In this document: one piece after another, positions 8,193 through 27,283 of the stretch | Position numbering within the stretch: the stretch's first letter is position 1 | Layout of the letters: every line of letters begins with the position of its first letter | Source of the DNA: Phyllobates terribilis | Lineage: Eukaryota | Direction of reading: 5' to 3' | DNA: 64,000 bases | NCBI RefSeq assembly: GCF_046119375.1 | Contig: NW_027362761.1 | Location: 1,035,028,001 to 1,035,092,000 of the forward strand | Position numbers and translations under genes: made by a program | Notes under the pieces: model-generated | The model's input: only the letters and a program-made list of their open reading frames with translations | What the model was told of the DNA's origin: nothing | Databases searched by the model: none

Positions 8193-9058
8193 TTCCCCCC
8201 TAGTTAATTTCAGTCCTCCGGGACTGAAAGATTTTTTTTGTTAACAAAGATAACATAACATTAACATTTATATTTGTAATTTGAACAGAGTCTCAAAAAT
8301 AAAATTTACAAAGACCATGGATAATGGGAAAGATGGATAACCAGTCCATACAACGCTAGTCAATCTTCTGCAGGCTGTTAAAGGGAAAGTCTTTTTGCCA
8401 CCACCAGTCCTGTGGCTTCGGTCCATTTTTAAACAATTTTCAAAAAGTTTCAGACGTCCAAACAGGTAAAGTCTCTTTAGGCTTAATGATTCAAATAGAC
8501 TTAATAATTCACAATACACAACAAAACATTTACTATGTGCCTCGGCGCAAGGGTCCTAGGTACTGCAGGGGCCTCTCCCGGTCATAAGCACTGTAGGCCC
8601 TTTGGCCCTCAGGGTCACCTATTGGCCAAGATTTTGCTCTCCCTAGACAGCTTCTTACGCCAACTCTACTCACCCCTTTTTTTTTTATGTTGTGTACCCG
8701 GTGTAACCTGTTTTGGTCTACTCGTCACCCTTCTATATACTGACTTTAACTACATATTTACATTTTTGAACCTATTTACATTTCCCTTTTGTTATGGTTT
8801 ACTCCCTGTATCTGAGTGGTGGGTGTCTAAAATTAATACGTGATGACCTCCGTAAAACTGGTATCCCACTGGTGCGTAAGCCTGGTGTGGAGCGAACACT
8901 ACTTACTGACTCATGTGTTGGTCTACGTAGCACAGGTATGCCGGAGTGTCTTCCCACTCCCCTAGTGAGAATGGCAGGTACTCCGATTGCAGGATTCCCT
9001 GGCTCGGCTACAGCGGGTGGTTCTTCTTCTCTTGATCCTTCTACTGGTTGTGGGAATG

Positions 9059-10970
9059 TCAACAAGGGAAGATTGTCTTAATTGTCCTTGGCGTCTCTTC
9101 TTCTGGTATGGGACAAGGGATATATTCTTTTTGTTGTAAGGGTTGAGGACACTTCTTTAAGTGGTCTCGGGACACTGTTGCTGTTGTTTTTCCGTTATCC
9201 TTGCTGATTAGACAGGTTTTCTGGTTGTCAAAATTGGATGGTAATACAGTGTATGGTTCTTCTTCCCATTGATTATCTAGCTTATGAAGTCTCTTTTTCC
9301 TTTTCAAAACCAATTCTCCGGGGGTTAACGGGATTCCTTGTGCATTTTTATTGAAATTGGTTTCTTGTCTTTCTCTGGATTTTGCTAGACTTTTTTCAAC
9401 ACACTCCTGTATTTTCTTGTATTGCTCTGTTCTTCTAGTATCCCAATCTGTACTTGAGGAGTCTTCCTCAGGAACTACAATGCCCATTTCAAAGTCCACT
9501 GGCAATTTTCCTGGTCTCACTCTCATTAAGTATGCCGGGGTACAATTAGTTGAGCTTACTGGGATGTTGTTATAGATGTCAATCAGATCTGGTAATTTCT
9601 CTGGCCATCTGTTTCTGTCTTCCAAGGGCAGAGTCTTCAGCAATTCTATTACCACGTGATTCATTTTTTCGTACATTCCGTTAGTTTGGGGATGGTAAGG
9701 CGTGGTACGAATTTTCTTGCATCCATACAAGCTACAGAACTCTTGAAATATTTCCACTTCAAAGGCAGGATCCTGATCTGTCAATACTTGTTCTGGATAT
9801 CCATGTGGCCTGCAGAAATAAGCTTGAAAGGCTCTTGCTGCTGTCTGAGCTGTCAAGTCCTTCACAGGAGCTACCACTAGGAATCTGGAATAGTGGTCCA
9901 CCATGGTAAGAGCATAAGTATAGCCTGATCTACTGGGTGTGAGTTTGACATGATCCAAGGCTACTAGTTCCAAGGGCTGTTTGGTCATGATAGGCTGGAG
10001 TGGTGCTTTCAGGTTGTTACGATCTCCTCTTCTTAATGAGCATGGGCCACAATTTTTACACCATTTTTCTATGGAAGACCTCATGCCAATCCAATAAAAC
10101 CTCTCATGTAACAGTATTTCCAGTTTTCTCCATCCAAAGTGTCCTGCTCCATTATGGTACGCTTCCAATACCATTTGGACGTCTCTCTTTGGAACCACAA
10201 CTTGCCATACCATTTCATGTGTCCTTGGATTGATATACCGTCTGCACAATTGGTTTTTATAGATAAATAACCTGCTTCTTTCTTTCCACAGGTATTGGGC
10301 CTCTGGGGGAGCATTCTTCTCAATTTTGGAATCCGGTTGGGTTACCAGCCTCTTCACTAGGCTCACTGCCGGATCGCTGTCTTGGGTTTCTTTCCATCCA
10401 TAATGAGGCAGCGGGTTTAGTGCAACATCCTGACGGTTCTGGTAGATATGGGTTTCTGTCATTTTCCATTTTCTACTTTTATGGAAAGCTGGAAGTTCTA
10501 TTTCCTCCAAGTCATCTGTTTCTTCTTCAAGCCCTTGCAAATGTACTTGAAGGTTTCTGGAGAGGGCATCAGCATTTTCATTTCCACGGCCTGTTCGGTA
10601 CTTGATAGTAAAGTCGTAGTTCGATAGCCGGGCCATCCAGCGCTGCTCCAATGCACCAAGCTTTGCAGTATCCAAGTGTGTTAGCGGATTATTGTCCGTA
10701 AAGATGGTAAATTTTGAAGCTGCTAAGTAATGCTTGAACCTCTCCGTGACTGCCCACACCAAGGCCAGGAACTCCAACTTAAAGGAACTGTAATTTTCCG
10801 GGTTCCTCTCAGTAGGTCGAAGTCTTCTACTGGCATAGGCAATTACTCTTTCCTTGCCTTCTTGTATTTGGGACAGTACTGCTCCCAGGCCTACATTACT
10901 TGCATCTGTGTAGAGGACAAATGGTAGGTTATAATCTGGGTACGCCAAGATTTCCTCACCGGTCAGGGCC
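9059..10970 (-). pseudogene. pol: Gypsy-1 pol, 3' part (RNase H and integrase)
   Basis: LYTDASNVGLGAVL, ELVALDH, VDHYSRF, HPQTNG and the HHCC zinc finger. Joins 24004-25032 in frame once the Maverick and one TSD copy are removed. Confidence 0.95.
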
Positions 10971-11554
10971 AGTAGTGTAGCAGCCCTATCTTTCGTCAAA
11001 CTCAATTTGACAGGTGCCACGCCCCCTATCAAAGTGTATCAAAGTGTGTAGCCACACCCCTCCTCCCCCTCCCCTATCAGTACGTGTGTTGTATCTTATC
11101 ATTTTATATGAATTTTATATGAGTTTGATGATGGTATCTGATTATTTACTCTTATTTGATAGTGTATGAGTTTATATGAATTTTATTGTTCCAGCAGATC
11201 TGTGTTTATATGAATTATATGGGCAAGTTACAACTACCCCCAAGTATATAAAGTGTGTGTTTTATACGGATGTAAAAAGCAAAGACACAGTAAAAGTATT
11301 AAACGATTTTATTGTTTTAAAAAATAAATACATCTCAAAGACATTTCAATAATATAAAAATCCTTACAGAATATTATAAAAAGTATCACAAGTACAATTA
11401 ATATACAGCATTACAATTCTTACAAAATAATATAAAAAGTGTTACATTCACATGTACCAAAATGCATGTAATAATAATAATATACATCATTACATTTCTT
11501 GCAGATTAATATAGAGCGTTACAATTCAGTCAGATCATTTATCCAATACATCAC

Positions 11555-12325
11555 TTACATCGTGAGCCACATGGATTGTAGTAATGGTAGAGACCTTTTT
11601 TTAGGCAGCAAAGTTCCTTGTGTGATACCTAATGATGGAGAGTGTAAAGATTGAATAGCGCGGGTCGGTGTGGATAGCGTCCGGGGTGTAGATACATCGA
11701 TACCTTCACTGATGGAAATTTTTAATCCATCTAAAAGCTGTCTAGTAGCGGGATTGGCCACAACTGTAGATGGAATATTTAGCTCTGCCATTGCCTGCAT
11801 AAATGAATCCCAACCCCGAGGCAGATTCCTGCTGGTCAGGGCATGGCTCTGTGTTGTACTACGTACCAAATCCAGCAAGTTAGATCCTGGTATTACAGTT
11901 CCTTTGAAAATAAATTCGCTTTTATCATTCCAGGATGTAACATTTTTATTCTGCAGCAGCCTGTTTAGTAAAAATTCAGCATTCTTTTTATATCGTTGGT
12001 TTACATGGCTTACAATTTCAGTGACCTCTTGATTTTAATCAGGGCCTGAATTTGGCAATTGCTGCTGATCAGATTCAGGAGTGCTAACGAGATTTAAAGT
12101 TGTTACTTCTTTTGAACTGTGCCTCGCATGTACCAAGTATCGTTGTAGCACGGAACTATACATTTTAATTTTCACATCATCGGGTATGTCACGACGTTGT
12201 AAAACTGCGCTAATTTCATCATCAAGACGACGAATAACACTCTCACGTATGTTATCTGTATTAGGGGGTCTTAGTTTGACTAGATCCTGTTTGGGAACTA
12301 GATACATTTTCTCTGTGTGCTCCAT
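11555..12325 (-). pseudogene. Maverick conserved accessory ORF (256 codons) with one in-frame TAA, left arm
   Basis: The ORFs 12035-12325 and 11555-11878 are one frame across the TAA at 12035-12037 (SGPD*NQEVTEIV...GSNLLDLVR). Confidence 0.75.
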
Positions 12326-12735
12326 TATTTGCCTGTGAGCAGACTTGTTATTATCGGTATTGCAAATCCGAAAAGAGGACCTATAAACCCGCCGGTCTGC
12401 TTTAGTAGGCGCTTCTTTTTCTTTATGGGCTGCGATCTATCACTCAGGGTTCTTATAGCTTTACGCCACTTCTTTAATATGTTTTTTTGTCGCTCTTTCA
12501 GGGGTATTCGGCCTTTTAAAATGTTTAAAGCAATTTCACCTATGGCTGTAATTAAATCTCTGCTTGCATTGTGCAAAATAGATTTTCTGACAGCGGGTGT
12601 TGCCTTCACCAGTGTTTTTAAGAGAGCCCAGTTACGACGGAGTCTCTCAGACATCTTTACAACACTATGGCCGCAGTGTAGAATGCCTGATTCCATGTAA
12701 AATTCACTTTTTAGAACTATTTTTCTTCTGCACAT
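12325..12735 (-). CDS. Small basic Maverick protein with a C-terminal GG-FIGPL amphipathic tail (adenovirus pX/pVI-like), left arm
   Basis: K/R-rich body ending KQTGGFIGPLFGFAIPIITSLLTGK; conserved slot after the ATPase. Confidence 0.7.
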   Translation of the reverse strand: MCRRKIVLKSEFYMESGILHCGHSVVKMSERLRRNWALLKTLVKATPAVRKSILHNASRDLITAIGEIALNILKGRIPLKERQKNILKKWRKAIRTLSDRSQPIKKKKRLLKQTGGFIGPLFGFAIPIITSLLTGK

Positions 12736-13378
12736 AGACAGCGGGCAATGCTGGTGGAAACATCCCCGTCCTTAAGCGCAGATCCTCAGGGGTATTAGCT
12801 CTCAAGTCTAACAGCAAATACCCATAAGGTTCCCTCGTTGCATCCTCAAAAGCTTCCAAGAAAAAACGTGTTTTTCCGGGGTACATCTGACGGGCTAGAG
12901 TTAAAATTTGTAATTTATCTCGTGGATTTTTAAAAAGCACCATGTACTTTGTGTTTAAAGTTATTGTGCGGCTTTTCTTACCCTGACAAAATATGTTTTG
13001 TACCAGGTAGAAAATGCTGAGATTTCTGTGGTGAACATACTTGGTAAATGCTTTTTCTATCTCGCAGTTATCGCTAGCACTCTCCATGAGATCATCAACA
13101 ATAGCCAAATTTACCTTGTCAGGCGGGAATAAACCATCATCTACGAATGTATGCGGCAGACCCTCCACAAATCTGATGTGGGGAAAAGAGAGAGAGATTT
13201 CATCATATAGTTTTTGCCAGCATGAATAAAACCAAACAATATTATTGTGTTTGTGAGAAAAATGAGTTTCAATATTATGTAACAGCTGTTTTACAAAATA
13301 GCTCTTTCCGGAATTAGACGGGCCGGCTAGAATGCAGGAGAATGGGTGTTGTAGCCGCGGCTCCATCACAATACTCAA
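12704..13378 (-). CDS. FtsK/A32-like packaging ATPase, left arm
   Basis: Walker A GPSNSGKS, Walker B AIVDDLM, HHRN motif. Confidence 0.92.
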   Translation of the reverse strand: MSIVMEPRLQHPFSCILAGPSNSGKSYFVKQLLHNIETHFSHKHNNIVWFYSCWQKLYDEISLSFPHIRFVEGLPHTFVDDGLFPPDKVNLAIVDDLMESASDNCEIEKAFTKYVHHRNLSIFYLVQNIFCQGKKSRTITLNTKYMVLFKNPRDKLQILTLARQMYPGKTRFFLEAFEDATREPYGYLLLDLRANTPEDLRLRTGMFPPALPAVYVQKKNSSKK

Positions 13379-16300
13379 CTAATAGCCAAATGGCAGGGTG
13401 GTGAAGTCGTCTAATAGGCGCCGCTTTGTGTAAACGCACTTTTGTGTTTTGCGCAGCGGTCTTGTTTCAACGTCCCAGTACTTTTTATTCCTCACAATGC
13501 CCGGCTGTTCTACGACAATTCGCTTCTGTGTTTCTGTGTCAGAATTACGTGGGTAGTCCAGAACTAAATCTTTCAGACTGCTAAAATTAATAGATTGAGT
13601 GTTACCGACATTTAGTGTTATATCCTTAACTTTTAAGACAGTTTTACCAGTGTTGAGTTTGTATCCGTAAGTTTTGGGCCCCGCAGAAACAAAGTCTGTG
13701 ATGTGAGTGTCATCGGGTATCTCACTGGTCAGTTCACCCAGGTAATCGCCTAAAGTCGGCTGCCACTCACCTTCCCTCTGCACAAAAATAACCGAATCTG
13801 TGTCGTGATAAAGGCACCTCTCCTGCAACCGGTCCAGCAGAGAATAGAGCTCTAGCCGGGCATACGCGGTTGTAAAACACGCTATAAAAATGTTGTGTTT
13901 TTGTTGACCGTGTGGTGTCCTTTTGCATATTTCCAGTTAATGGTTGCAGTTTCATCATCAATGAAATGTAACATTGAAATGTCATAGTAAGGTAGAAACA
14001 CATGCTGAAAAAGCTCATCGGGGTTGCTAACAATGCTGGTACATGGTAAATTAGATCTCTGTGCAAACTTTCCCCATAAAGAATTTAAGAAAAGTTTGGA
14101 GATCTGTCTCTTTGCAGGATTCACGCCTATATTTTCAGGCCGTAATTGTACACCTTCTTTTTCAAGAAAGGAGTCAATGTACTGTTTTTTCTTGACATCA
14201 TCACTGCACCAGCTGGGATAACCCGAAGCCTCTTGCTTATCCCGAAGATGTAATTTAATGTAGGGGGCAAACAGATCATCAGTGCTGTTAGGAAAATGAC
14301 ATATTTCGTAGATGTGTGCGATCCTATACCCTTTTTCTATGGCCAGCTCAAGCTCTATAGTGCACCATGTACCTGTCAGGGAACGCTCTTCATCACTATG
14401 TGCACAAACATCCGTTTGTGAATTTACAGCGCATGTGTAGCAAAGGGGGAACATTAACTTTTTGTTGAGTTTTACAGGGAGAACTGGAAAGAATAAATCT
14501 CTTGGAGGGTAGACCTTGACTTTAGCAATGCCAAAGTATTTTTTAATGAAACCAAAATCATCATAGATGATATCTGGGTGGCCTACAGGGTATGTTTTAG
14601 TTTTGTTTACAAAGGGATAAAGACTGCTGAAATCATAGTAATGTAATGTCTCTCCATCTCTCAGGCTGTGATAGAGTTTAATGGCGTTAGTTCGGCTGCC
14701 ATAAAGAGCATCGCGTGGGTCTAAAGGTGTTGGGAATTCCATTTGGAGAAGAAATGTTTGAAGGTTAGAATCTTTTTCAACCATTTCACTCCAGTCGTGC
14801 TCCCACATCACTCTTACGCTGTATCCGCAGCACTGCAAGTAACGCTTTTTAGCTAAAAAGGCGTAATATAACTGGCCATAAGATGTATTTGTGACCTTAT
14901 TTGTGTCATTTTCATTGTAACATACAGGACAGCCATGATAAAAACAACCCTGAAATTCAAATGCTACATGCTGTTTGTTAACATAGGCGTAACCATCTAA
15001 AAAATATCTCCCGACTTGTTTTTCGCCGCCCCTCAAAGCATGCTGAATGGTAATGTTCTCTGTATGTGCTACATACATGAGCCACTGTATAGCGGGTGAC
15101 GAGTAGCGCTTTTTTGTCTTGTGATAATTATCACCGGGTAAAATGGCGATGGTGTTTTTTGGTAGAAATTTAAATCTGTACATTGCCATACATACAGAGG
15201 CCAGGGTGATGAGTTGAAAAGGATCAACACATCGGGACACTACAATTTTTTTCTTTTGCAGCTTACAGTATGTTTTAACATTTTTTCTCGTCATTTCCAT
15301 AATACGCTCTCTGTAAAGTTCACACGAGCGTCTCAAAATCTCAACATCTTGCTGACAATAAGATTTTAGCTCAGCCTTAAAGTCAAAAGTTGAATCAGTC
15401 TGGCTGTCATACCACTCCATGAACTCGCCTTTCTCACTAGCTGACATGTACTCCACACCATAATATTCTACAGCAGGTAGTGGCCCAACATAGTTTTGAT
15501 TTTCTTCGGTGTTAAAAAAGTGTGGGAAGTGACCCTTTGAGCCTGAGAAGCCCATGGCTTGTGGTAGTTTACTAAGCTTCATGGGTATGAAATTTAGCGA
15601 GTCTATGAACCTCATTTCCAAATCAGGCAGCGTCACACACAAGAGACGACCACCTTGAGTTATCAGCTGCACTTTTAGTTTTTCAAAAATCAGCTCCTTA
15701 ACAATAAAGTAAGCGTCGTATCGGCCGGCGTTGTGGGCTATAAACGTATAGTGTGAAAATTTACCGCTGGCAAAGAACTGAACAAAGTCATGAGTGCAAG
15801 TTTTACCTTCAAATTCCCAGGAAAGGTTACCACACAGCGTTGTAGCATAAATGTAATTCGGGATGTGCGTGCCTGTCTCCTGCATGCATTCAAAGTCGTA
15901 AAAGATATAGAGATCTGACTCTTCCTTTGGTACATACCGCCGCATGTAACAAAGATGGTCATCGAATTTATTTAGATGAATGTGACAAACAGTGCAGCGC
16001 AGACCATTACATTTATGTTCAGTCTCACTATTTCGGGCTACAAAACGGTGACATTCATCACAGAATGTTTTAAGCCTACAGAATGTTGATTTTTCTGCGG
16101 CAAATTGTTTGTGATAATCTAAGCACTCGCTCGAGCGACAATACACCCGACAGGTAGGACATCGGGGTTGTTGCGCGCCAGTGCTTTCCACACAACTCTC
16201 TCTTTGACAAGCTCTACAAAAATACTGGCAAGAATGGTTGTACTTGTGATGAAACACCGAATTGCAGCGCTCACAAAAGTGAAACTCACCGATAAAACCC

Positions 16301-17386
16301 TTCATATTTTTGATACCATAGTAGTGTGCATCATGATGCAATAAGAAAATGGTTTTACCGCTAGCTGTGTTGGTTGTTTCAAAGTAACGCCAATCACCCT
16401 GACTGTAGTACAGCACTTTAATGTTGACGTCCAGATGTTTCTCAAAAGCTGCAATATCGCTGAAGCTTACTAGTTGGCTATCAGGTATGCACAAGTCTGT
16501 GTGTAGGCTGTTAGCGCGGCTCAGTAAAACTGCATCACCAACATCGGTGTCTGCCAACAAGGCACACACACTAGCAGCGAAACACAGATTTGTGCTGTAA
16601 TTGTTAAAGTCGTACAGCCACTGTCTCTTTTGTTTGATGATTTGACTGCTCGTTATAGATTTAAGTCGTCTTTTACACCGCCTCGCCTGTTTTTAATGAT
16701 TGTAACGACTAATTTCAGGGAATTGGCTGCTAAACATTCAGCATTACTTTGCAGTGTGCGAGCAACAGCGTTTAAAATGATTCCGAACTAAAATCCTCCC
16801 GACTTTGTTTGGCAGCAAAAATGGGATCTAAGGTGTCACCCCCTTCGAGTCTTAACTGTACAAAATCACCAGGATCGATGTCTTGGATGATTCTGTCCAG
16901 TAATGACTGGACGGCGGCATGCACAGCATTCATGGCATCTACAAATGAATGTATTCGGTCTAAATTTTCAAATCTGAAATGATCAGTATACATGTGCGCA
17001 TTGAAATTGCGGAGATGTCTTTCATGGTGGTGAAAATGCTGTAAAAATACTGAATGATCTGTCCCCGCTACATAATCACCACCACCAATACCTGCAGCAA
17101 CATCATCAGCAACATAATCCTCTACATTTTCAGCATGGGGTTCATTGGGAGAGTTGTTTTGTGAATTTTGAAACACGCTGGTGGTAACATTTGCCGGGGC
17201 ATCTTGACTGTGAAAATGTTGATGGGCTTGTTGTATCAGCAACTGAGGCTCCTGATTAGTTGTTGTGACACGAGAGGCCTCTCGTCGCCTTCTAGCCGCT
17301 AGTGACCGCTTAGCGCTCACCAATAGTTTTAGAGCTCGTTTTATGACTCTGGCTCTGTTATACAGATGTATTGGGGTTTTAGCCAT
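13379..17386 (-). pseudogene. polB: Protein-primed family B DNA polymerase, left arm; full N-terminus but three 1-bp deletions
   Basis: Inverse copy of 17473-21333. One-base-shorter homopolymer runs at about 16775, 16672 and 13893 split it into the three listed ORFs. Confidence 0.93.
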
Positions 17387-17472
17387 TTTCTGCAGTCCAC
17401 AACCAATCTGTCTCAGTCACAAGTTATTTGAATCTACAGATGTTGATGCTGTATCTGTATACAAGCGTCTGA

Positions 17473-20400
17473 ATGTGTGCAGCTCATCAATATTTGCACA
17501 GTCAAGATGCCCCGGCAAATGTTACCACCAGCGTGTTTCAAAATTCACAAAACAACTCTCCCAATGAACCCCATGCTGAAAATGTAGAGGATTATGTTGC
17601 TGATGATGTTGCTGCAGTTATTGGTGGTGGTGATTATGTAGCGGGGACAGATCATTCAGTATTTTTACAGCATTTTCACCACCATGAAAGACATCTCCGC
17701 AATTTCAATGCGCACATGTATACTGATCATTTCAGATTTGAAAATTTAGACCGAATACATTCATTTGTAGATGCCATGAATGCTGTGCATGCCGCCGTCC
17801 AGTCATTACTGGACAGAATCATCCAAGACATCGATCCTGGTGATTTTGTACAGTTAAGACTCGAAGGGGGTGACACCTTAGATCCCATTTTTGCTGCCAA
17901 ACAAAGTCGGGAGGATTTTAGTTCGGAATCATTTTTAAACGCTGTTGCTCGCACACTGCAAAGTAATGCTGAATGTTTAGCAGCCAATTCCCTGAAATTA
18001 GTTGTTACAATCATTAAAAACAGGCGAGGCGGTGTAAAAAGACGACTTAAATCTATAACGAGCAGTCAAATCATCAAACAAAAGAGACAGTGGCTGTACG
18101 ACTTTAACAATTACAGCACAAATCTGTGTTTCGCTGCTAGTGTGTGTGCCTTGTTGGCAGACACCGATGTTGGTGATGCAGTTTTACTGAGCTGCGCTAA
18201 CAGCCTACACACAGACTTGTGCATACCTGATAGCCAACTAGTAAGCCTCAGCGATATTGCAGCTTTTGAGAAACATCTGGACGTCAACATTAAAGTGCTG
18301 TACTACAGTCAGGGTGATTGGTGTTACTTTGAAACAACCAACACAGCTAGCGGTAAAACCATTTTCTTATTGCATCATGATGACCACTACTATGGTATCA
18401 AAAATATGAAGGGTTTTATCGGTGAGTTTCACTTTTGTGAGCGCTGCAATTCGGTGTTTCATCACAAGTACAACCATTCTTGCCAGTATTTTTGTAGAGC
18501 TTGTCAAAGAGAGAGTTGTGTGGAAAGCACTGGCGCGCAACAACCCCGATGTCCTACCTGTCGGGTGTATTGTCGCTCGAGCGAGTGCTTAGATTATCAC
18601 AAACAATTTGCCGCAGAAAAATCAACATTCTGTAGGCTTAAAACATTCTGTGATGAATGTCACCGTTTTGTAGCCCGAAATAGTGAGACTGAACATAAAT
18701 GTAATGGTCTGCGCTGCACTGTTTGTCACATTCATCTAAATAAATTCGATGACCATCTTTGTTACATGCGGCGGTATGTACCAAAGGAAAAGTCAGATCT
18801 CTATATCTTTTACGACTTTGAATGCATGCAGGAGACAGGCACGCACATCCCGAATTACATTTATGCTACAACGCTGTGTGGTAACCTTTCCTGGGAATTT
18901 GAAGGTAAAACTTGCACTCATGACTTTGTTCAGTTCTTTGCCAGCGGTAAATTTTCACACTATACGTTTATAGCCCACAACGCCGGCCGATACGACGCTT
19001 ACTTTATTGTTAAGGAGCTGATTTTTGAAAAACTAAAAGTGCAGCTGATAACTCAAGGTGGTCGTCTCTTGTGTGTGACGCTGCCTGATTTGGAAATGAG
19101 GTTCATAGACTCGCTAAATTTCATACCCATGAAGCTTAGTAAACTACCACAAGCCATGGGCTTCTCAGGCTCAAAGGGTCACTTCCCACACTTTTTTAAC
19201 ACCGAAGAAAATCAAAACTATGTTGGGCCACTACCTGCTGTAGAATATTATGGTGTGGAGTACATGTCAGCTAGTGAGAAAGGCGAGTTCATGGAGTGGT
19301 ATGACAGCCAGACAGATTCAACTTTTGACTTTAAGGCTGAGCTAAAATCTTATTGTCAGCAAGATGTTGAGATTTTGAGACGCTCGTGTGAACTTTACAG
19401 AGAGCGTATTATGGAAATGACGAGAAAAAATGTTAAAACATACTGTAAGCTGCAAAAGAAAAAAACTGTAGTATCCCGATGTGTTGATCCTTTTCAACTC
19501 ATCACCCTGGCCTCTGTATGTATGGCAATGTACAGATTTAAATTTCTACCAAAAAACACCATCGCCATTTTACCCGGTGATAATTATCACAAGACAAAAA
19601 AGCGCTACTCGTCACCCGCTATACAGTGGCTCATGTATGTAGCACATACAGAGAACATTACCATTCAGCATGCTTTGAGGGGCGGCGAAAAACAAGTCGG
19701 GAGATATTTTTTAGATGGTTACGCCTATGTTAACAAACAGCATGTAGCATTTGAATTTCAGGGTTGTTTTTATCATGGCTGTCCTGTATGTTACAATGAA
19801 AATGACACAAATAAGGTCACAAATACATCTTATGGCCAGTTATATTACGCCTTTTTAGCTAAAAAGCGTTACTTGCAGTGCTGCGGATACAGCGTAAGAG
19901 TGATGTGGGAGCACGACTGGAGTGAAATGGTTGAAAAAGATTCTAACCTTCAAACATTTCTTCTCCAAATGGAATTCCCAACACCTTTAGACCCACGCGA
20001 TGCTCTTTATGGCAGCCGAACTAACGCCATTAAACTCTATCACAGCCTGAGAGATGGGGAGACATTACATTACTATGATTTCAGCAGTCTTTATCCCTTT
20101 GTAAACAAAACTAAAACATACCCTGTAGGCCACCCAGATATCATCTATGATGATTTTGGTTTCATTAAAAAATACTTTGGCATTGCTAAAGTCAAGGTCT
20201 ACCCTCCAAGAGATTTATTCTTTCCAGTTCTCCCTGTAAAACTCAACAAAAAGTTAATGTTCCCCCTTTGCTACACATGCGCTGTAAATTCACAAACGGA
20301 TGTTTGTGCACATAGTGATGAAGAGCGTTCCCTGACAGGTACATGGTGCACTATAGAGCTTGAGCTGGCCATAGAAAAAGGGTATAGGATCGCACACATC

Positions 20401-21333
20401 TACGAAATATGGCATTTTCCTAACAGCACTGATGATCTGTTTGCCCCCTACATTAAATTACATCTTCGGGATAAGCAAGAGGCTTCGGGTTATCCCAGCT
20501 GGTGCAGTGATGATGTCAAGAAAAAACAGTACATTGACTCCTTTCTTGAAAAAGAAGGTGTACAATTACGGCCTGAAAATATAGGCGTGAATCCTGCAAA
20601 GAGACAGATCTCCAAACTTTTCTTAAATTCTTTATGGGGAAAGTTTGCACAGAGATCTAATTTACCATGTACCAGCATTGTTAGCAACCCCGATGAGCTT
20701 TTTCAGCATGTGTTTCTACCTTACTATGACATTTCAATGTTACATTTCATTGATGATGAAACTGCAACCATTAACTGGAAATATGCAAAAGGACACCACA
20801 CGGTCAACAAAAACACAAACATTTTTATAGCGTGTTTTACAACCGCGTATGCCCGGCTAGAGCTCTATTCTCTGCTGGACCAGTTGCAGGAGAGGTGCCT
20901 TTATCACGACACAGATTCGGTTATTTTTGTGCAGAGGGAAGGTGAGTGGCAGCCGACTTTAGGCGATTACCTGGGTGAACTGACCAGTGAGATACCCGAT
21001 GACACTCACATCACAGAGTTTGTTTCTGCGGGGCCCAAAACTTACGGATACAAACTCAACACTGGTAAAACTGTCTTAAAAGTTAAGGGTATAACACTAA
21101 ATGTCGGTAACACTCAATCTATTAATTTTAGCAGTCTGAAAGATTTAGTTCTGGACTACCCACGTAATTCTGACACGGAAACACAGAAGCGAATTGTCGT
21201 AGAACAGCCAGGCATTGTGAGAAATAAAAAGTACTGGGAGGTTGAAACAAGACCACTGCGCAAAACACAAAAGTGCGTTTACACAAAGCGGCGCCTATTA
21301 GACGACTTCACCACCCTGCCATTTGGCTATTAG
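17473..21333 (+). CDS. polB: Protein-primed family B DNA polymerase, right arm; open frame lacking the native first 53 codons
   Basis: Exo motifs FYDFE, HNAGRYD and YCQQD; polymerase motifs YDFSSLYP, KLFLNSLWGKF and YHDTDS. Confidence 0.93.
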   Translation: MCAAHQYLHSQDAPANVTTSVFQNSQNNSPNEPHAENVEDYVADDVAAVIGGGDYVAGTDHSVFLQHFHHHERHLRNFNAHMYTDHFRFENLDRIHSFVDAMNAVHAAVQSLLDRIIQDIDPGDFVQLRLEGGDTLDPIFAAKQSREDFSSESFLNAVARTLQSNAECLAANSLKLVVTIIKNRRGGVKRRLKSITSSQIIKQKRQWLYDFNNYSTNLCFAASVCALLADTDVGDAVLLSCANSLHTDLCIPDSQLVSLSDIAAFEKHLDVNIKVLYYSQGDWCYFETTNTASGKTIFLLHHDDHYYGIKNMKGFIGEFHFCERCNSVFHHKYNHSCQYFCRACQRESCVESTGAQQPRCPTCRVYCRSSECLDYHKQFAAEKSTFCRLKTFCDECHRFVARNSETEHKCNGLRCTVCHIHLNKFDDHLCYMRRYVPKEKSDLYIFYDFECMQETGTHIPNYIYATTLCGNLSWEFEGKTCTHDFVQFFASGKFSHYTFIAHNAGRYDAYFIVKELIFEKLKVQLITQGGRLLCVTLPDLEMRFIDSLNFIPMKLSKLPQAMGFSGSKGHFPHFFNTEENQNYVGPLPAVEYYGVEYMSASEKGEFMEWYDSQTDSTFDFKAELKSYCQQDVEILRRSCELYRERIMEMTRKNVKTYCKLQKKKTVVSRCVDPFQLITLASVCMAMYRFKFLPKNTIAILPGDNYHKTKKRYSSPAIQWLMYVAHTENITIQHALRGGEKQVGRYFLDGYAYVNKQHVAFEFQGCFYHGCPVCYNENDTNKVTNTSYGQLYYAFLAKKRYLQCCGYSVRVMWEHDWSEMVEKDSNLQTFLLQMEFPTPLDPRDALYGSRTNAIKLYHSLRDGETLHYYDFSSLYPFVNKTKTYPVGHPDIIYDDFGFIKKYFGIAKVKVYPPRDLFFPVLPVKLNKKLMFPLCYTCAVNSQTDVCAHSDEERSLTGTWCTIELELAIEKGYRIAHIYEIWHFPNSTDDLFAPYIKLHLRDKQEASGYPSWCSDDVKKKQYIDSFLEKEGVQLRPENIGVNPAKRQISKLFLNSLWGKFAQRSNLPCTSIVSNPDELFQHVFLPYYDISMLHFIDDETATINWKYAKGHHTVNKNTNIFIACFTTAYARLELYSLLDQLQERCLYHDTDSVIFVQREGEWQPTLGDYLGELTSEIPDDTHITEFVSAGPKTYGYKLNTGKTVLKVKGITLNVGNTQSINFSSLKDLVLDYPRNSDTETQKRIVVEQPGIVRNKKYWEVETRPLRKTQKCVYTKRRLLDDFTTLPFGY

Positions 21334-22008
21334 TTGAGTATTGTGATGGAGCCGCGGCTACAACACCCATTCTCCTGCATTCTAGCCGGCCCGTCTAATT
21401 CCGGAAAGAGCTATTTTGTAAAACAGCTGTTACATAATATTGAAACTCATTTTTCTCACAAACACAATAATATTGCTTGGTTTTATTCATGCTGGCAAAA
21501 ACTATATGATGAAATCTCTCTCTCTTTTCCCCACATCAGATTTGTGGAGGGTCTGCCGCATACATTCGTAGATGATGGTTTATTCCCGCCTGACAAGGTA
21601 AATTTGACTATTGTTGATGATCTCATGGAGAGTGCTAGCGATAACTGCGAGATAGAAAAAGCATTTACCAAGTATGTTCACCACAGAAATCTCAGCATTT
21701 TCTACCTGGTACAAAACATATTTTGTCAGGGTAAGAAAAGCTGCACAATAACTTTAAACACAAAGTACATGGTGCTTTTTAAAAATCCACGAGATAAATT
21801 ACAAATTTTAACTCTAGCCCGCCAGATGTACCCCGGAAAAACACGTTTTTTCTTGGAAGCTTTTGAGGATGCAACGAGGGAACCTTATGGGTATTTGCTG
21901 TTAGACTTGAGAGCTAATACCCCTGAGGATCTGCGCTTAAGGACGGGGATGTTTCCACCAGCATTGCCCGCTGTCTATGTGCAGAAGAAAAATAGTTCTA
22001 AAAAGTGA
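21334..22008 (+). CDS. FtsK/A32-like packaging ATPase, right arm
   Basis: GPSNSGKS, TIVDDLM, HHRN. Confidence 0.92.
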   Translation: MSIVMEPRLQHPFSCILAGPSNSGKSYFVKQLLHNIETHFSHKHNNIAWFYSCWQKLYDEISLSFPHIRFVEGLPHTFVDDGLFPPDKVNLTIVDDLMESASDNCEIEKAFTKYVHHRNLSIFYLVQNIFCQGKKSCTITLNTKYMVLFKNPRDKLQILTLARQMYPGKTRFFLEAFEDATREPYGYLLLDLRANTPEDLRLRTGMFPPALPAVYVQKKNSSKK

Positions 22009-22387
22009 ATTTTACATGGAATCAGGCATTCTACACTGCGGCCATAGTGTTGTAAAGATGTCTGAGAGACTCCGTCGTAACTGGGCTCTCTTAAAAACAC
22101 TGGTGAAGGCAACACCCGCTGTCAGAAAATCTATTTTGCACAATGCAAGCAGAGATTTAATTACAGCCATAGGTGAAATTGCTTTAAACATTTTAAAAGG
22201 CCGAATACCCCTGAAAGAGCGACAAAAAAACATATTAAAGAAGTGGCGTAAAGCTATAAGAACCCTGAGTGATAGATCGCAGCCCATAAAGAAAAAGAAG
22301 CGCCTACTAAAGCAGACCGGCGGGTTTATAGGTCCTCTTTTAGGATTTGCAATACCGATAATAACAAGTCTGCTCACAGGCAAATAA
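21977..22387 (+). CDS. Small basic pX/pVI-like Maverick protein, right arm
   Basis: Inverse copy of 12325-12735, ending KQTGGFIGPLLGFAIPIITSLLTGK. Confidence 0.7.
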   Translation: MCRRKIVLKSEFYMESGILHCGHSVVKMSERLRRNWALLKTLVKATPAVRKSILHNASRDLITAIGEIALNILKGRIPLKERQKNILKKWRKAIRTLSDRSQPIKKKKRLLKQTGGFIGPLLGFAIPIITSLLTGK

Positions 22388-23157
22388 TGGAGCACACAGA
22401 GAAAATGTATCTAGTTCCCAAACAGGATCTAGTCAAACTAAGACCCCCTAATACAGATAACATACGTGAGAGTGTTATTCGTCGTCTTGATGATGAAATT
22501 AGCGCAGTTTTACAACGTTGTGACATACCCGATGATGTGAAAATTAAAATGTATAGTTCCGTGCTACAACGATACTTGGTACATGCGAGGCACAGTTCAA
22601 AAGAAGTAACAACTTTAAATCTCGTTAGCACTCCTGAATCTGATCAGCAGCAATTGCCAAATTCAGGCCCTGATTAAAATCAAGAGGTCACTGAAATTGT
22701 AAGCCATGTAAACCAACGATATAAAAAGAATGCTGAATTTTTACTAAACAGGCTGCTGCAGAATAAAAATGTTACATCCTGGAATGATAAAAGCGAATTT
22801 ATTTTCAAAGGAACTGTAATACCAGGATCTAACTTGCTGGATTTGGTACGTAGTACAACACAGAGCCATGCCCTGACCAGCAGGAATCTGCCTCGGGGTT
22901 GGGATTCATTTATGCAGGCAATGGCAGAGCTAAATATTCCATCTACAGTTGTGGCCAATCCCGCTACTAGACAGCTTTTAGATGGATTAAAAATTTCCAT
23001 CAGTGAAGGTAGCGATGTATCTACACCCCGGACGCTATCCACACCGACCCGCGCTATTCAATCTTTACACTCTCCATCATTAGGTATCACACAAGGAACT
23101 TTGCTGCCTAAAAAAAGGTCTCTACCATTACTACAATCCATGTGGCTCACGATGTAA
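22387..23157 (+). pseudogene. Maverick conserved accessory ORF (256 codons) with one in-frame TAA, right arm
   Basis: TAA at 22675-22677; the frame continues open to 23157. Confidence 0.75.
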
Positions 23158-24013
23158 GTGATGTATTGGATAAATGATCTGACTGAATTGTAACGCTCTA
23201 TATTAATCTGCAAGAAATGTAATGATGTATATTATTATTATTACATGCATTTTGGTACATGTGAATGTAACACTTTTTATATTATTTTGTAAGAATTGTA
23301 ATGCTGTATATTAATTGTACTTGTGATACTTTTTATAATATTCTGTAAGGATTTTTATATTATTGAAATGTCTTTGAGATGTACGGTATTTATTTTTTAA
23401 AACAATAAAATCGTTTAATACTTTTACTGTGTCTTTGCTTTTTACATCCGTATAAAACACACACTTTATATACTTGGGGGTAGTTGTAACTTGGCCATAT
23501 AGATAATATGCCCAAGCAATAAGATGCACACTATCAAATAAACAGTATGGGGGTATAAAACTCATATAAAATGATAATTGTAACTTGGCCATATACATAA
23601 TATGCCCAAGCAAATTATAAAACTCATATAAAATGATAATTGTAACTTGCCCAGTATTTATCTTTAAAAAAATAAAATCTTTTAATACTTTTACTGTGTC
23701 TTTGCTTTTTACATCCGTATAAAACACACACTTTATATACTTGGGGGTAGTTGTAACTTGCCCATATAATTCATATAAACACAGATCTGCTGGAACAATA
23801 AAATTCATATAAACTCATACACTATCAAATAAGAGTAAATAATTAGATACCATCATCAAACTCATATAAAATTCATATAAAATGATAAGATACAACACAC
23901 GAACTGATAGGGGAGGGGGAGGAGGGGTGTGGCTACACACTTTGATACACTTTGATAGGGGGCGTGGCACCTGTCAAATTGAGTTTGACGAAAGATAGGG
24001 CTGCTACACTACT

Positions 24014-26129
24014 AGGGCCTGTTTCATTTGTTGGAAGGAGTCTTCTTGTTTCTTTCCCCATTCCAACGGCGGCTCTGAAGACCTTCTCTTCTTAGCTTGG
24101 CCTACCAGAAGATCTTGTAGGGGCGCTGCCATCTTCGTGTAGCCCTTAATAAATCTTCTGTAATACCCAACCAAACCTAAGAACTGACGTATCTCTCTGA
24201 CGGTGGCCGGCCTTTGCCAGTCCTGGATCGCTGTCACTTTTTCCGGATCTGGTGTTACGCCATCCGCACTGATCACATGCCCTAGGTATTGGACTTTTGG
24301 CTTCAGCAGGTAACATTTAGATGGTTTGAGTTTCATTCCATACTTTGTTAGAGCTGTAAATAGCTCCACCAGGTGTTCCAGATGTTCTTCATACGTTTTG
24401 GAATACACTATGACGTCATCCAGGTATAAAAGTACCGTCTCAAAATTCCGGTGTCCCAGGCAGCACTCCATGAGTCTCTGAAACGTCCCCGGTGCATTGC
24501 ATAATCCAAATGGCATGCTATTGAATTCGCATAGGCCCACTGGTGTTGTGAATGCTGTTTTCTCCCTGTCTTCTTCTGCAACGGAGACCTGCCAATACCC
24601 ACTAGTGAGATCTAATGTGGAGAAATACTTAGCAGTCTTTAATGCAGCAAGAGTCTCCTCTATCCGGGGTAACGGGTAAGCATCTTTGTGAGTGATCTTA
24701 TTTACCTCCCTGTAATCCACACACATCCTCATAGTGCCATCTTTTTTTCTGACTAAGACTAAGGGGGCCGCCCAGGGACTACAGCTATCTCTTATAACCC
24801 CGGCCTCCTTCATGTCCTGCAGCATCTCTTTAGCACGCTGGTAGTGGTTTGGTGGGATGGGTCTATGTCTCACTTTAATCGGGGGATGATCTCCTGTGGG
24901 TATGTGATGGCGTACCCCTTTTATCCTCCCAAAATCTAATGGATGCTTACTGAATACTTGGCTAAACTCTTGTACTACCCGGTAAACTCCTTGCTTCTGG
25001 TGGTCGGGAGTGGCATCAGTCCCTATGTGCAACTGCTGACACCACTCCTCCAGCTGTCCCTTGGGGTTGTTGTCCTCCGCCTGACTTGAGGCAAGGGCTC
25101 TAGTGTCTGTATGTTATTATTACTGACAGTGTACAGCTTTGCTACAGTAACATACCGGGGTAGTTTCACTTCTTCCTCACCACAATTCAACACACGAATT
25201 GGTACTCTTCCCCTGCCTACATCCACCACCCCTCTAGCTGTCAGCAGTGTAGGTCTATGCTCTGAATATACCGGTTCTACAATTGCCTGGTATTCCTTTC
25301 TTCTGATACCCATAGCTGCTCGACACCATATCATCATTACACTGTTTGGTGGTAATACAATGGGAAACGGGTCTGTTACCCGCGCACTGCCAATCTCCCC
25401 CCCAGACAGATTTACCTGTTGCTTGTGAATTAAGGCACGGATTTCTCTTTGAAGGACTCTCCTCCGCCCAATGCCAGCAGTCTCTGTAATCTGTTGGAGT
25501 AAAAACATCACTTCTTCAAGGCAGTTTTCAATCACATTAGTACCAAGCACCATGTAAGGATATTTGTTATTGGGGTCATCTTCTACCACACATAACCCTT
25601 GGCCTCTCAACTCCACCCTCCCCAGCTTTATTGTCACTTCTCTAAACCCCACCTGATTCAGTGGTTGACCATTAGCTGCTAAAATGACAAGACTAGAGTC
25701 TGGGGGGCTAAGATCAGCATCAGACCAAAATTGCTTGTAAAGGATATGTGGGATGGTGGTGACTTGTGACCCAGTGTCCAATAGGGCCGATGTGGGGATT
25801 CCTTCTAGCGTAATGTTGAGGTACGGGCGGCCTCCCACATACCGACTACGCCAGTCATATGGGCCCTGCCATTTTATTCCTGGGGGTTGGCCCTGGGACC
25901 CAGGAATCTCGGGTTTAAATGACATCTTCTTGCAAAGTGGCCCGGTTTGTTGCAACGAAGGCAAACGGGTTGTCCTGAAAAATCTGTGTGGTCGGTGGCT
26001 CTGCGTCGGAATGGTGCGTTGGTCCCCTGAACGGGCGACTTGTTGATCTCCTCCACGGGCGACATGGCTCTGCGTCGGAATGGTGCGTTGGTCCACTGAA
26101 CGGGCGACATGAGCTTTCTCCTCATCCAC
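24014..26129 (-). pseudogene. pol: Gypsy-1 pro-pol, 5' part (protease and RT)
   Basis: ALLDTGSQ protease motif; YPLPRI, LDLTSGYWQ and LYLDDV RT motifs; frameshift near 25085. Confidence 0.95.
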
Positions 26130-27013: not shown

Positions 27014-27262
27014 GACGGTGCCCCCCTAGTTAACCGTTGCCAGCCGCTACGATCAACTCCTTCAGTAACCGGTGACTCTAAAAAAAAAAAAAATGGCGGG
27101 GCTATCCTCGCGCTCCTTTAGCCGCGCCCCTGCGACTCTCTTCGCTCTGTGACGCAGTTTAATTTCTCTATCGCGCAGTAATGACGGCCTTTTTTTTACA
27201 GTACAAAAACATTCAATAAAGTCCAATTTAAGCACACAGTACCCGGTTCTATCGGGCCCGGG

Positions 27263-27280
27263 ATCCTGTTCGTGACGCCA
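27263..27280 (-). promoter_or_regulatory. Primer-binding site TGGCGTCACGAACAGGAT, probably tRNA-Ser(CGA)
   Basis: Lies 3 nt inside the 5' LTR boundary. The + strand ATCCTGTTCGTGACGCCA matches my recollection of a vertebrate tRNA-Ser(CGA) 3' end. Confidence 0.75.
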
Positions 27281-27283
27281 AAC

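What the first reader, a model, noticed from the sequence alone, without database searches (positions are those of the whole stretch)
10971..24013. Giant palindromic Maverick: a snap-back, helper-dependent defective genome integrated in the germline
Seen: a 13-kb element with canonical AGTAGT ends and a 6-bp TSD, whose two 6.3-6.5-kb arms are inverted copies of terminus, accessory ORF, pX-like gene, ATPase and polB. No integrase, protease, or major/minor capsid ORF is present. Established: autonomous Mavericks carry those genes and replicate by protein-primed strand displacement; copy-back genomes are known in viruses. Inference: the integrase/capsid half was replaced by a copy of the replication half. 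This gives two functional origins and near unit length, so the element behaves like a defective-interfering or satellite Maverick integrated by a helper's integrase. I am not aware of this architecture being described, but cannot search.
Basis: partly seen in the sequence, partly recalled or inferred. Interest (0 to 1): 0.92.

Follow-up and report, generated by a model that had tools for sequence, protein, structure and literature searches.

The report
Palindromic, gene-poor Maverick in a frog genome
A 13-kb virus-like Maverick element in a poison-frog genome is built from two mirror-image copies of its replication half; a related mirror-image element sits at two other chromosomal sites in a close relative, so such defective copy-back genomes can spread.

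Summary
Window 10971-24013 is one insertion with (AGT)2/(ACT)2 ends and a perfect 6-bp duplication (AGGGCC). It splits the pol ORF of a Ty3/gypsy retrotransposon in phase. Two 6.3-6.5 kb arms are 99.5% identical inverted copies of the Maverick replication module (pPolB, FtsK-type ATPase, PM- and PZ-position ORFs, terminus), around a 252-nt centre. No integrase, protease or capsid gene is present.

The left arm plus centre is collinear with normal 14-15 kb Mavericks of related frogs, so only one junction is new.

Related loci add three points:
- In Phyllobates terribilis, whose polB fragments are 96-97% identical to the window's, an independently formed palindromic derivative sits at two unrelated loci. 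Both copies share the same junction but have different perfect duplications.
- In Anomaloglossus, a copy with no substitutions against a normal copy has one end replaced by a 2.8-kb inverted copy of the other end.
- A P. terribilis relative with the same termini carries the missing integrase, protease and capsid module, though it is itself defective.

Best reading (about 0.68): a strand-switch product of protein-primed replication, integrated by a helper's integrase. Repair after integration is not excluded for this locus. Interference with a helper is untested. I found no published description of this architecture.

The parts
10965..10970 (.). Left copy of the 6-bp target-site duplication (AGGGCC)
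   Evidence: Read directly; identical to 24014-24019.
10971..24013 (.). Whole palindromic Maverick derivative, 13,043 bp, with (AGT)2 and (ACT)2 ends
   Evidence: The end motif and TSD length match vertebrate Mavericks as described in PMC8097293.
10971..17228 (.). Left arm, 6,258 bp; collinear with the centre as in normal relatives
   Evidence: Window 11555-17421 aligns in one piece to L004 15838-9990.
10971..11554 (.). Left terminal non-coding region with subterminal repeats; presumed replication origin at the tip
   Evidence: homology to relatives' coding part starts at 11555. The first 30 nt are identical to the terminus of L008.
11555..12325 (-). PZ-position gene, left copy; broken by 1 in-frame stop that is shared with the right copy
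   Evidence: tblastn with the 255-aa ORF of L004: one HSP, 100% coverage, 75% identity, 1 stop in each arm. The name is by position, after PMC8097293.
12325..12735 (-). PM-position ORF, left copy (136 aa), unbroken
   Evidence: 94% identity to the L004 homologue; no Pfam family.
12704..13366 (-). FtsK/A32-type packaging ATPase, left copy, unbroken
   Evidence: The identical-length right copy gives Pox_A32 at E=1e-4 and a named adintovirus FtsK hit.
13379..17386 (-). Protein-primed DNA polymerase B, left copy. It has the native start codon, which lies in the centre, and is broken by 3 frameshifts.
   Evidence: tblastn with P0128: 100% query coverage, 3 frame changes, 0 stops. The N-terminus aligns with L001 and L004.
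17229..17480 (.). Unique 252-nt centre: the polB 5' end plus about 95 nt of upstream sequence, contiguous with the left arm. The single novel junction is at its right edge.
17481..24013 (.). Right arm, 6,533 bp; an inverted copy of the left arm with 267 extra nt in the subterminal region
17473..21333 (+). Protein-primed DNA polymerase B, right copy. The ORF is unbroken at 1,286 aa but lacks the native N-terminal ~5% and starts at a fortuitous ATG in the centre.
   Evidence: PF03175 E=9e-43; single tblastn HSP, 95% coverage, no stops.
21346..22008 (+). FtsK/A32-type packaging ATPase, right copy, unbroken
21977..22387 (+). PM-position ORF, right copy (136 aa), unbroken
22387..23157 (+). PZ-position gene, right copy; broken by 1 in-frame stop that is shared with the left copy
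23158..24013 (.). Right terminal non-coding region, with one extra copy of a subterminal repeat segment
   Evidence: (pairs I4, I5).
24014..24019 (.). Right copy of the target-site duplication (AGGGCC)
7249..28227 (-). Host of the insertion: a Ty3/gypsy LTR retrotransposon. LTRs at 7249-8192 and 27284-28227 are 98.7% identical with TG..CA ends and a 4-bp TSD (GTAT). Its pol is split by the Maverick between RT (24014-25032) and RNaseH-integrase (9059-10970).
   Evidence: The duplicated base next to the element sits at the same codon position in both pol pieces, so the ORF is in phase across the empty site.

Best explanation
This is a real, non-autonomous derivative of a dendrobatid-frog Maverick (adintovirus-like element). 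Module 2 (integrase, minor capsid, PW, major capsid, protease) has been replaced by an inverted copy of module 1 (pPolB, ATPase, PM, PZ) and its terminus.

The most likely origin is a strand switch during protein-primed, strand-displacement replication of an extrachromosomal genome. A strand started at the module-1 terminus was extended about 95 nt past the polB start. It then switched to its own (or the displaced) complementary strand about 250-270 nt back and was copied out to the same terminus. The next round of replication would make this a linear duplex with two identical, origin-bearing ends.

That genome had no integrase gene, so it would have been inserted by an integrase supplied in trans. 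The insertion went into the pol gene of a gypsy element and made the 6-bp duplication. Since then the two arms have decayed independently in the germline.

Shown here: the architecture, the single integration event, the single novel junction, the missing genes, and the fact that palindromic relatives occupy several loci. Inferred: the timing (before integration), the replicative mechanism, the helper, and passage through a capsid. Not addressed: any interference with the helper.
For: 1. One integration event. The 6-bp TSD is perfect, the ends are canonical, and the host pol ORF is in phase across the site.
2. One novel junction. The left arm plus centre aligns as one piece to normal elements L004 and L001 through the polB start. 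The three innermost mismatches fall in the last 20 nt of the arms, against 33 in 6,258 nt overall. This fits a switch at an imperfect inverted microhomology.
3. The arms were probably identical at formation. Over the 3.8 kb shared with L008, 9 differences are derived in each arm, and each arm is 63 mismatches from L008. Of the 33 arm differences, 22 are transitions and 11 lie at CpG sites. Arm divergence is 0.53% against 1.27% for the LTRs of the surrounding gypsy element, which agrees with the nesting order.
4. Palindromic genomes of this lineage do integrate. L009 and L011 in P. terribilis share an identical junction and are collinear over 9,768 bp at 99.73% identity through the centre. Their flanks are unrelated and their TSDs differ (GTTGGG and GCTATG). 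They derive from an L008-type parent and contain upstream sequence that the window element lacks, so they formed independently.
5. Arm replacement appears without elapsed time. L006 in Anomaloglossus has 0 substitutions over 11.3 kb against the normal copy L004. Its module-2 end is nevertheless replaced by a 2.83-kb inverted copy of the other end, with a perfect TSD of CCTATG.
6. Lengths stay near unit size. The window element is 13,043 bp, L009 12,991 bp and L006 about 14.1 kb, against 14.7-14.8 kb for normal copies.
7. Integrase is absent from the element and from the rest of the window, apart from gypsy integrases. L008 shares the terminal 30 nt and carries module 2.
Against: The window's own junction was seen at one locus only, because the source genome is not in any collection I could search. 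There was no exact protein on record, and the junction and terminus were absent from viral and metagenome contigs.

A repair route after integration gives the same end product. In that route a break is followed by fold-back priming about 250 nt away, copying out through the left TIR, and annealing to the resected right TIR.

The arm differences do not separate the two routes. The terminal 584 nt show no excess divergence (2 mismatches).

The length argument rests on three elements, and L011 is only 11.7 kb.

L007/L002, another arm-replaced locus, has arms 0.9% diverged and no verifiable TSD. Some such structures therefore arise by recombination between different copies.

The PZ-position gene already carried a stop before the duplication, so the parent may itself have been defective.
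Confidence: 0.68

Rival explanations
1. Rearrangement after integration. A normal, full-length Maverick inserted here. A later chromosomal break inside it was repaired by fold-back priming or template switching that copied the module-1 arm outward. The new strand was captured by annealing at the opposite TIR, which deleted module 2. No helper or extrachromosomal palindrome is needed.
For: The product would be indistinguishable at a single locus: TSD and termini kept, one novel junction with short imperfect homology. Junctions in related variants show 0-5 nt of microhomology or short filler, as in repair products. L007/L002 shows that some arm-replaced structures involve two diverged copies and lack a clean TSD.
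Against: This route needs kilobases of resection or a second break, plus capture exactly within the TIR. The same class of change recurs in this lineage. One case is a copy with zero substitutions against its normal sibling (L006). Another is a palindrome present at two loci with different TSDs (L009 and L011). That recurrence points to a process tied to the element's own replication and shows that palindromes are integration substrates.
Confidence: 0.22
2. Assembly artefact: a chimeric or palindromic long read, or a wrong path through the TIR repeat, created a false inverted duplication.
For: Palindromic chimeric reads are a known artefact of long-read libraries (general knowledge). One related locus (L002) abuts an N gap and looks like a partly mis-assembled duplicate of L007.
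Against: The arms differ by 33 substitutions and 5 indels, including 267 nt. They also differ in gene state: 3 frameshifts in one polB copy and none in the other. A read-through of one molecule would not produce this. The centre is an asymmetric 252-nt stretch of genuine parental sequence. Both flanks are the two in-phase halves of one gypsy pol with a perfect TSD. Comparable structures occur in two other independent assemblies.
Confidence: 0.03
3. Two separate Maverick insertions: a nested insertion, or neighbouring inverted copies later joined by recombination or deletion.
For: L007/L002 may be of this kind, with diverged arms and unmatched flanking hexamers.
Against: There are no internal termini or internal TSD at the centre. 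The outer TSD is perfect and the host ORF is in phase. Both arms are equally distant from L008 and share 54 differences against it over 3.8 kb, so they have a common immediate ancestor.
Confidence: 0.02

Closest known systems
Vertebrate Mavericks/Polintons (adintovirus-like elements) as catalogued by Barreat & Katzourakis 2021 (PMC8097293)
   Same: The ends are (AGT)2//(ACT)2 and the TSD is 6 bp. The pPolB-ATPase-PM-PZ module is in the same order. In this lineage the two modules point away from each other, as reported for the cane toad. Nucleotide identity is 83-85% to complete Anomaloglossus copies and 98% to L008.
   Different: Module 2 is absent and module 1 is present twice in inverted orientation. 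The TIR is effectively 6.3 kb, against the 46-1,447 bp reported for intact elements. That paper% of copies defective but does not mention palindromic or arm-replaced forms (the term 'palindrom' has 0 occurrences).
Copy-back / snap-back defective viral genomes (review PMC13506859)
   Same: One genome end is duplicated in inverted orientation. The structure is highly symmetric, with a single switch junction and loss of essential genes. The review defines the snap-back type as reverse-complementary copying across nearly the full length, which gives a palindrome.
   Different: Those genomes are mostly from negative-strand RNA viruses and are seen in infected cells or virus stocks. Here the genome is DNA, protein-primed, and preserved as a germline insertion. 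Interference is not shown.
Adenovirus defective genomes in incomplete particles, and variants carrying left-end sequence at both ends (Daniell 1976; Hammarskjold & Winberg 1980)
   Same: These are related protein-primed linear dsDNA replicons. Sub-genomic molecules are enriched for one end, and long inverted terminal duplications of that end arise during replication. That last point is from my memory of those papers. Their existence, and the left-end bias of incomplete particles, are confirmed only through PMC12090768.
   Different: Adenovirus does not integrate by an integrase, and its defective genomes are not known as heritable, TSD-flanked insertions. The two original papers are not held in the library, so the comparison is a lead and not a test.
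Long-TIR and arm-replaced siblings found here: L006 (Anomaloglossus) and L009/L011 (Phyllobates terribilis)
   Same: They belong to the same Maverick lineage, have the same termini and TSD length, and have one end replaced by an inverted copy of the other. L009 is within 52 bp of the window element's length.
   Different: The junctions differ and so does the gene content. L006 keeps most of module 2 and one full module 1. L009 and L011 lack the ATPase region and the polB 5' part, and carry expanded subterminal repeats.
Mu killer of maize (an inverted duplication of a partial MuDR transposon that silences MuDR through hairpin RNA)
   Same: It is a heritable inverted duplication of part of an autonomous element and could give long double-stranded RNA if transcribed (comparison from memory).
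   Different: There is no expression or small-RNA evidence here. Mu killer is not flanked by the element's own two termini and is not known to transpose.

Membership tests
Maverick / Polinton | [quoted passage not shown] | tested here: met
   PF03175 at E=9e-43; 81-88% identity to frog Maverick polB proteins and 96-97% to P. terribilis fragments.
Maverick / Polinton | Retrovirus-like (rve) integrase encoded by the element | tested here: not met
   No rve hit in any ORF of 10971-24013. tblastn with the integrases of L004 and L008 hits only gypsy integrases outside the element. The relatives L001, L004 and L008 do encode it, with a chromodomain. The window copy is therefore a non-autonomous descendant and not an autonomous member.
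Maverick / Polinton | Terminal inverted repeats with (AGT)2/(ACT)2 or (AG)3/(CT)3 ends and a 6-bp target-site duplication | tested here: met
   definition taken from PMC8097293.
Maverick / Polinton | [quoted passage not shown] | tested here: not met
   Only the ATPase is present, twice. There are no hits for the protease or the 392/435-, 143- and 252-aa module-2 proteins of relatives.
Copy-back / snap-back defective viral genome | Inverted duplication of one genome end including its origin, with a single switch junction and otherwise parental collinearity | tested here: met
Copy-back / snap-back defective viral genome | Generated during genome replication rather than by host repair of an integrated copy | tested here: inconclusive
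   Indirect support comes from recurrence in the lineage, from L006 having 0 substitutions against L004, and from L009 and L011 sitting at two loci. Nothing at the window locus itself separates the two routes.
Copy-back / snap-back defective viral genome | Propagated with the help of a complete genome (the same junction in independent copies) | tested here: inconclusive
   Met for the related palindrome L009/L011. It could not be tested for the window's junction, because the source genome is not searchable.
Defective interfering genome | Lowers the yield of the helper | not testable with these tools
   No sequence feature bears on this.
Foldback-type DNA transposons (FB, Galileo) | Long TIRs built of internal tandem repeats, mobilised by a cut-and-paste transposase | tested here: not met
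   The arms are unique coding sequence. TRF finds no tandem array within 10900-24100. The TSD and ends are those of Mavericks.

The most novel reading that the evidence does not exclude
Vertebrate Mavericks produce copy-back defective genomes during protein-primed replication. Under this reading, these genomes are packaged under a length constraint of about 13 kb, carried to the germline and integrated by a helper's integrase. Frog genomes would then hold a fossil record of defective viral genomes. This would be direct genomic evidence that these elements replicate extrachromosomally as viruses and complement each other in trans. A further, less likely layer is that the 6-kb inverted repeat, if transcribed, feeds hairpin-derived small RNAs that silence active Mavericks.
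Probability: 0.45. Interest if true: 0.82.

Novelty: new variant of a known kind. Interest (0 to 1): 0.7.

Why it matters
Mavericks are inferred to be viruses that replicate by protein priming, but neither their virions nor their replication has been observed. Copy-back genomes are a signature of replication errors of a free genome.

Three findings here point to extrachromosomal replication, supply of integrase in trans, and possibly a capsid-size limit:
- Such genomes are present as TSD-flanked germline insertions.
- One of them sits at two loci.
- Two independently formed ones differ in length by only 52 bp.

The work also has a practical consequence. Survey pipelines that require both integrase and polB within a window, or that expect sub-kilobase TIRs, will miss or misclassify these copies. 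Kilobase-scale perfect inverted repeats are also potential sources of double-stranded RNA and of chromosomal fragility.

Tried and rejected
1. Flip versus flop of the centre. The centres of L009 and L011 align only in opposite orientation. I rejected this as evidence, because the orientation in which a palindromic locus is returned is arbitrary and L009's arms carry no arm-specific markers.
2. Excess divergence in the natural-TIR part of the arms, which would have favoured formation after integration. BLAST suggested 5 mismatches in 361 nt. The global alignment gives 2 in 584 nt against 31 in 5,674 nt, so there is no signal.
3. L002 as a second palindrome. It abuts an N gap and shares its right flank with L007. 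I did not use it, and I did not fill or look up the N run.
4. L007 as clean support. Its arms differ by 24 mismatches in 2.6 kb and the flanking hexamers do not match. I set it aside as ambiguous.
5. Finding further copies of the window's own junction. There was no exact-protein record. The ATPase search gave nothing closer than 84% identity. The junction and terminus are absent from metagenome and viral contigs.
6. Tandem-repeat description of the 267-nt extra segment. TRF reports nothing; the repeat finder shows one extra copy of a 124-nt segment.
7. The original adenovirus papers (Daniell 1976; Daniell & Mullenbach 1978) are not held. That comparison rests on memory and on a reference list.
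8. The sub-threshold MHC_II_alpha hit of the 165-aa ORF in the right subterminal repeats is taken as chance.

Slip to report: while reasoning over the ORF table, I went through the coordinates of the ORF fragments of the broken left-arm polB. Those coordinates implicitly mark where the breaks are. No break places are given in my notes, script outputs or this report.

Full report
OBSERVATION

The inverted-repeat scan tiles the whole interval with pairs that are 97-99% complementary. Taken together, the left arm is 10971-17228, the right arm is 17481-24013, and a unique 252-nt centre lies between them. A global alignment of the left arm against the reverse complement of the right arm gives 33 mismatches and five indel events of 1, 1, 1, 5 and 267 nt over 6,258 nt. 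BLAST gives 99.3% identity.

The element starts AGTAGT and ends ACTACT. The hexamer AGGGCC flanks it on both sides, at 10965-10970 and 24014-24019. The window contains no N.

The flanks are the two halves of one Ty3/gypsy pol gene on the minus strand:
- Protease and RT lie to the right (24014-26129).
- RNase H and integrase lie to the left (9059-10970).

This gypsy element has 944-bp LTRs at 7249-8192 and 27284-28227. They are 98.7% identical, have TG..CA ends, and are flanked by a 4-bp duplication. The duplicated base next to the Maverick sits at the same codon position in both pol pieces. The host ORF is therefore in phase across the empty site. I compared the two pieces apart and did not join them. 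Together these features describe one clean integrase-type insertion.

GENE CONTENT

Each arm carries the same genes, read outward from the centre:
- A protein-primed family-B polymerase (PF03175, E=9e-43).
- An A32/FtsK-like ATPase. The Pfam hit is weak, but the protein is 68% identical to one that a public source names FtsK of a box-turtle adintovirus.
- A 136-aa ORF and a roughly 255-aa gene with no Pfam family. Both are conserved at the same positions in relatives.

This is "module 1" (ppolb-atp-pm-pz) of vertebrate Mavericks as described by Barreat & Katzourakis (PMC8097293).

- Right-arm polB has no breaks, but it covers only 95% of the relative's protein and lacks the native N-terminus.
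- Left-arm polB has three frameshifts and full coverage, including the native start, which lies in the centre.
- The ATPase and the PM-position ORF are unbroken in both arms.
- The PZ-position gene has one in-frame stop in each arm. Because it is shared, it predates the duplication.

Proteins of module 2 from two relatives (protease, 392/435-aa, 143-aa and 252-aa proteins, integrase) find nothing in the element. The only hits in the window are distant matches of the integrase to gypsy integrases.

WHERE IT COMES FROM

The best polB matches are all from frogs. Fragments annotated in Phyllobates terribilis are 96-97% identical. The window therefore comes from that species or a very close dendrobatid.

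Normal relatives are 14-15 kb with TIRs of about 200-500 bp. They carry module 2 on one strand and module 1 on the other, diverging from the centre. The normal copies examined were:
- Anomaloglossus baeobatrachus: L001, L004, L005.
- Dendrobates tinctorius: L012, L013.

L008 of P. terribilis has the same terminal 30 nt as the window element and is 98% identical over the shared part. It carries protease, capsid-module ORFs and a chromodomain integrase. It is itself defective, because the integrase is split and the polB 5' part is deleted. It is the closest available picture of the missing half.

THE JUNCTION

Window 11555-17421 aligns as one piece to L004 15838-9990. This covers the left arm and most of the centre. 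The alignments with L001, L003 and L004 show that the centre holds the polB start and about 95 nt of upstream sequence.

Only one adjacency is new: the right edge of the centre, at 17480/17481. Three of the 33 arm mismatches fall in the innermost 20 nt, where about 0.1 would be expected. Two explanations fit. Either the switch used a pre-existing imperfect inverted homology, or synthesis just after the switch was inaccurate. The relatives are too diverged at that spot to decide between these.

AGE AND SYMMETRY

Over the 3.8 kb shared with L008, nine arm differences are derived in the left arm, nine in the right, and one is unresolved. Each arm is 63 mismatches from L008. Of all 33 arm differences, 22 are transitions and 11 lie at CpG sites.

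This is what independent germline decay of two initially identical arms should look like. It also shows that the arms share an immediate ancestor. Arm divergence (0.53%) is less than half the LTR divergence of the surrounding gypsy element (1.27%), which agrees with the nesting order. CpG observed/expected is 0.71 in the arms against 0.43 in the rest of the window.

RELATED REARRANGED COPIES

This is the evidence that bears most on the interpretation.

(a) P. terribilis, L009 and L011.
- L009 is 12,991 bp and L011 is 11,664 bp. They lie on different scaffolds, and both are palindromic Maverick derivatives.
- L009 has 6.07-kb arms at 99.95% identity around an 848-nt centre.
- The arm interior plus the centre is collinear with L008. 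The arms also lack the ATPase region and the polB 5' part.
- The two loci share an identical junction sequence. In the matching orientation they give a single 9,768-bp alignment through the centre at 99.73% identity.
- Their flanks are unrelated. Their perfect duplications differ: GTTGGG and GCTATG.
- A palindromic genome of this lineage was therefore integrated at least twice.
- It contains upstream sequence that the window element lacks, so the two palindromes formed independently.

(b) Anomaloglossus, L006.
- L006 has no substitutions over 11.3 kb against the normal copy L004.
- Its module-2 end is nevertheless replaced by a 2.83-kb inverted copy of the other end, with a perfect duplication of CCTATG.
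- A host-repair accident of exactly this class, in a copy too young to have gained a single substitution, is unlikely. An error of the element's own replication is the simpler reading.

(c) Anomaloglossus, L007/L002.
- This locus is also arm-replaced, but its arms differ by 24 mismatches in 2.6 kb and its flanking hexamers do not match.
- L002 abuts an N gap, which I left alone.
- I treat this locus as ambiguous. It shows that recombination between different copies also happens.

LENGTHS

| Copy | Length |
|---|---|
| Normal copies | 14.0-14.8 kb |
| Window palindrome | 13,043 bp |
| L009 | 12,991 bp |
| L006 | about 14.1 kb |
| L011 | 11,664 bp |

L009 reaches its length with much-expanded subterminal repeats in both arms. 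L011 has asymmetric arms, so it has probably lost subterminal repeats after insertion.

Two independently formed palindromes within 52 bp of each other hint at a size constraint such as capsid capacity. PMC8097293 reports about 10% size variation and draws the same inference for intact elements. With so few cases this is only suggestive.

MECHANISM

The best-supported reading is a copy-back, strand-switch product of protein-primed replication that was later integrated by an integrase supplied in trans. At formation it probably still had one full-length polB, two ATPase genes and two origin-bearing ends. It lacked integrase, protease and capsid genes. It would therefore have depended on a helper for integration and packaging, and not necessarily for DNA synthesis.

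Of these steps:
- The architecture, the single insertion event and the mobility of palindromic relatives are shown.
- The timing, the mechanism and the helper are inferred.
- Interference with a helper is untested.

The main rival is fold-back repair after integration, with capture at the opposite TIR. It yields the same product and cannot be excluded for this locus. I give it about 0.2.

Mis-assembly is very unlikely. The arms differ in sequence and in gene state. The centre is asymmetric parental sequence. Both flanks match one in-phase gypsy pol. Two other assemblies show comparable structures.

LITERATURE

Full-text searches for Maverick/Polinton together with palindromic, head-to-head, foldback, defective interfering, long TIRs, hairpin or non-autonomous returned no description of palindromic or arm-replaced Mavericks.

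PMC8097293 reports TIRs of 46-1,447 bp in intact vertebrate elements and% of copies defective. It does not mention such forms.

A review of defective viral genomes defines snap-back genomes in just this structural sense.

The closest analogue in a protein-primed DNA virus is adenovirus, with defective genomes carrying long inverted duplications of one end. I know this only from memory and from a reference list, because the papers are not held.

VERDICT

The element is a new structural variant of a known kind, and it now has sibling cases in two other frog genomes.

SLIP

While reasoning over the ORF table, I went through the fragment coordinates of the broken left-arm polB. These implicitly mark where the breaks are. 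Consensus lines printed by the alignment tool were not used.

Noticed in passing
window 7249-28227: A complete Ty3/gypsy LTR retrotransposon on the minus strand hosts the Maverick. Its 944-bp LTRs are 98.7% identical with TG..CA ends and a 4-bp duplication (GTAT). The integrases of the Maverick's relatives carry a chromodomain, which may bias insertion toward repeat-rich chromatin.
   Followed up: partly
L006 2463-16560 (Anomaloglossus baeobatrachus CM109169.1): A Maverick with 2.83-kb TIRs. Its protease/capsid end is replaced by an inverted copy of the ATPase-PM-PZ end. It has a perfect TSD and zero substitutions against the normal copy L004.
   Followed up: yes
L007 1811-18223 and L002 9128-17101 (Anomaloglossus): A complex variant: a 788-bp segment inverted in place, plus an inverted, 0.9%-diverged copy of the other end. 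The flanking hexamers do not match, within a TA microsatellite. L002 has the same right flank as L007 but abuts an N gap, so it is probably the same locus assembled twice.
   Followed up: partly
L009 2503-4830 and 13166-15493; window 23386-23776: The subterminal regions consist of repeat units whose number varies between copies and between arms: about 2.3 kb per arm in L009, 0.58 kb in the window's left arm, and 0.85 kb in its right arm. In L009 this expansion brings a gene-poor palindrome up to 12,991 bp, within 52 bp of the window element.
   Followed up: partly
L004/L005/L006/L007 (Anomaloglossus): Four or more loci encode the identical 1,338-aa polB and differ by 0-3 substitutions over 11-13 kb. 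This Maverick lineage has therefore been active very recently in Anomaloglossus baeobatrachus.
   Followed up: partly
window 29497-31874; 44944-48959; 52311-53634 and 55794-56717; 1763-3432; 6162-7248: Several satellite-like arrays: 54-bp x44 copies, 110-bp x37 copies, a 200-bp array present twice in inverted orientation, and two 31/62-bp arrays. One of the 31/62-bp arrays directly abuts the gypsy LTR.
   Followed up: no
window ~39743-41473: A second, diverged gypsy-like pol/integrase region, 68% nucleotide identity to the host gypsy. Also a 386-bp repeat shared between 40745-41130 and the window end 63615-64000, at 97% identity.
   Followed up: no
window 23311-23808 (-): A 165-aa ORF found only in the right arm's extra subterminal segment gives a sub-threshold MHC_II_alpha Pfam hit (22.9 bits against a cut-off of 23.0). 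It lies in AT-rich repeat sequence and is taken as chance.
   Followed up: no
L001 8363-9994; L004 8050-14255 gene models: Relatives carry an additional gene of about 385-430 aa, with no Pfam family, immediately upstream of polB. The window's centre keeps only its last ~95 nt.
   Followed up: no
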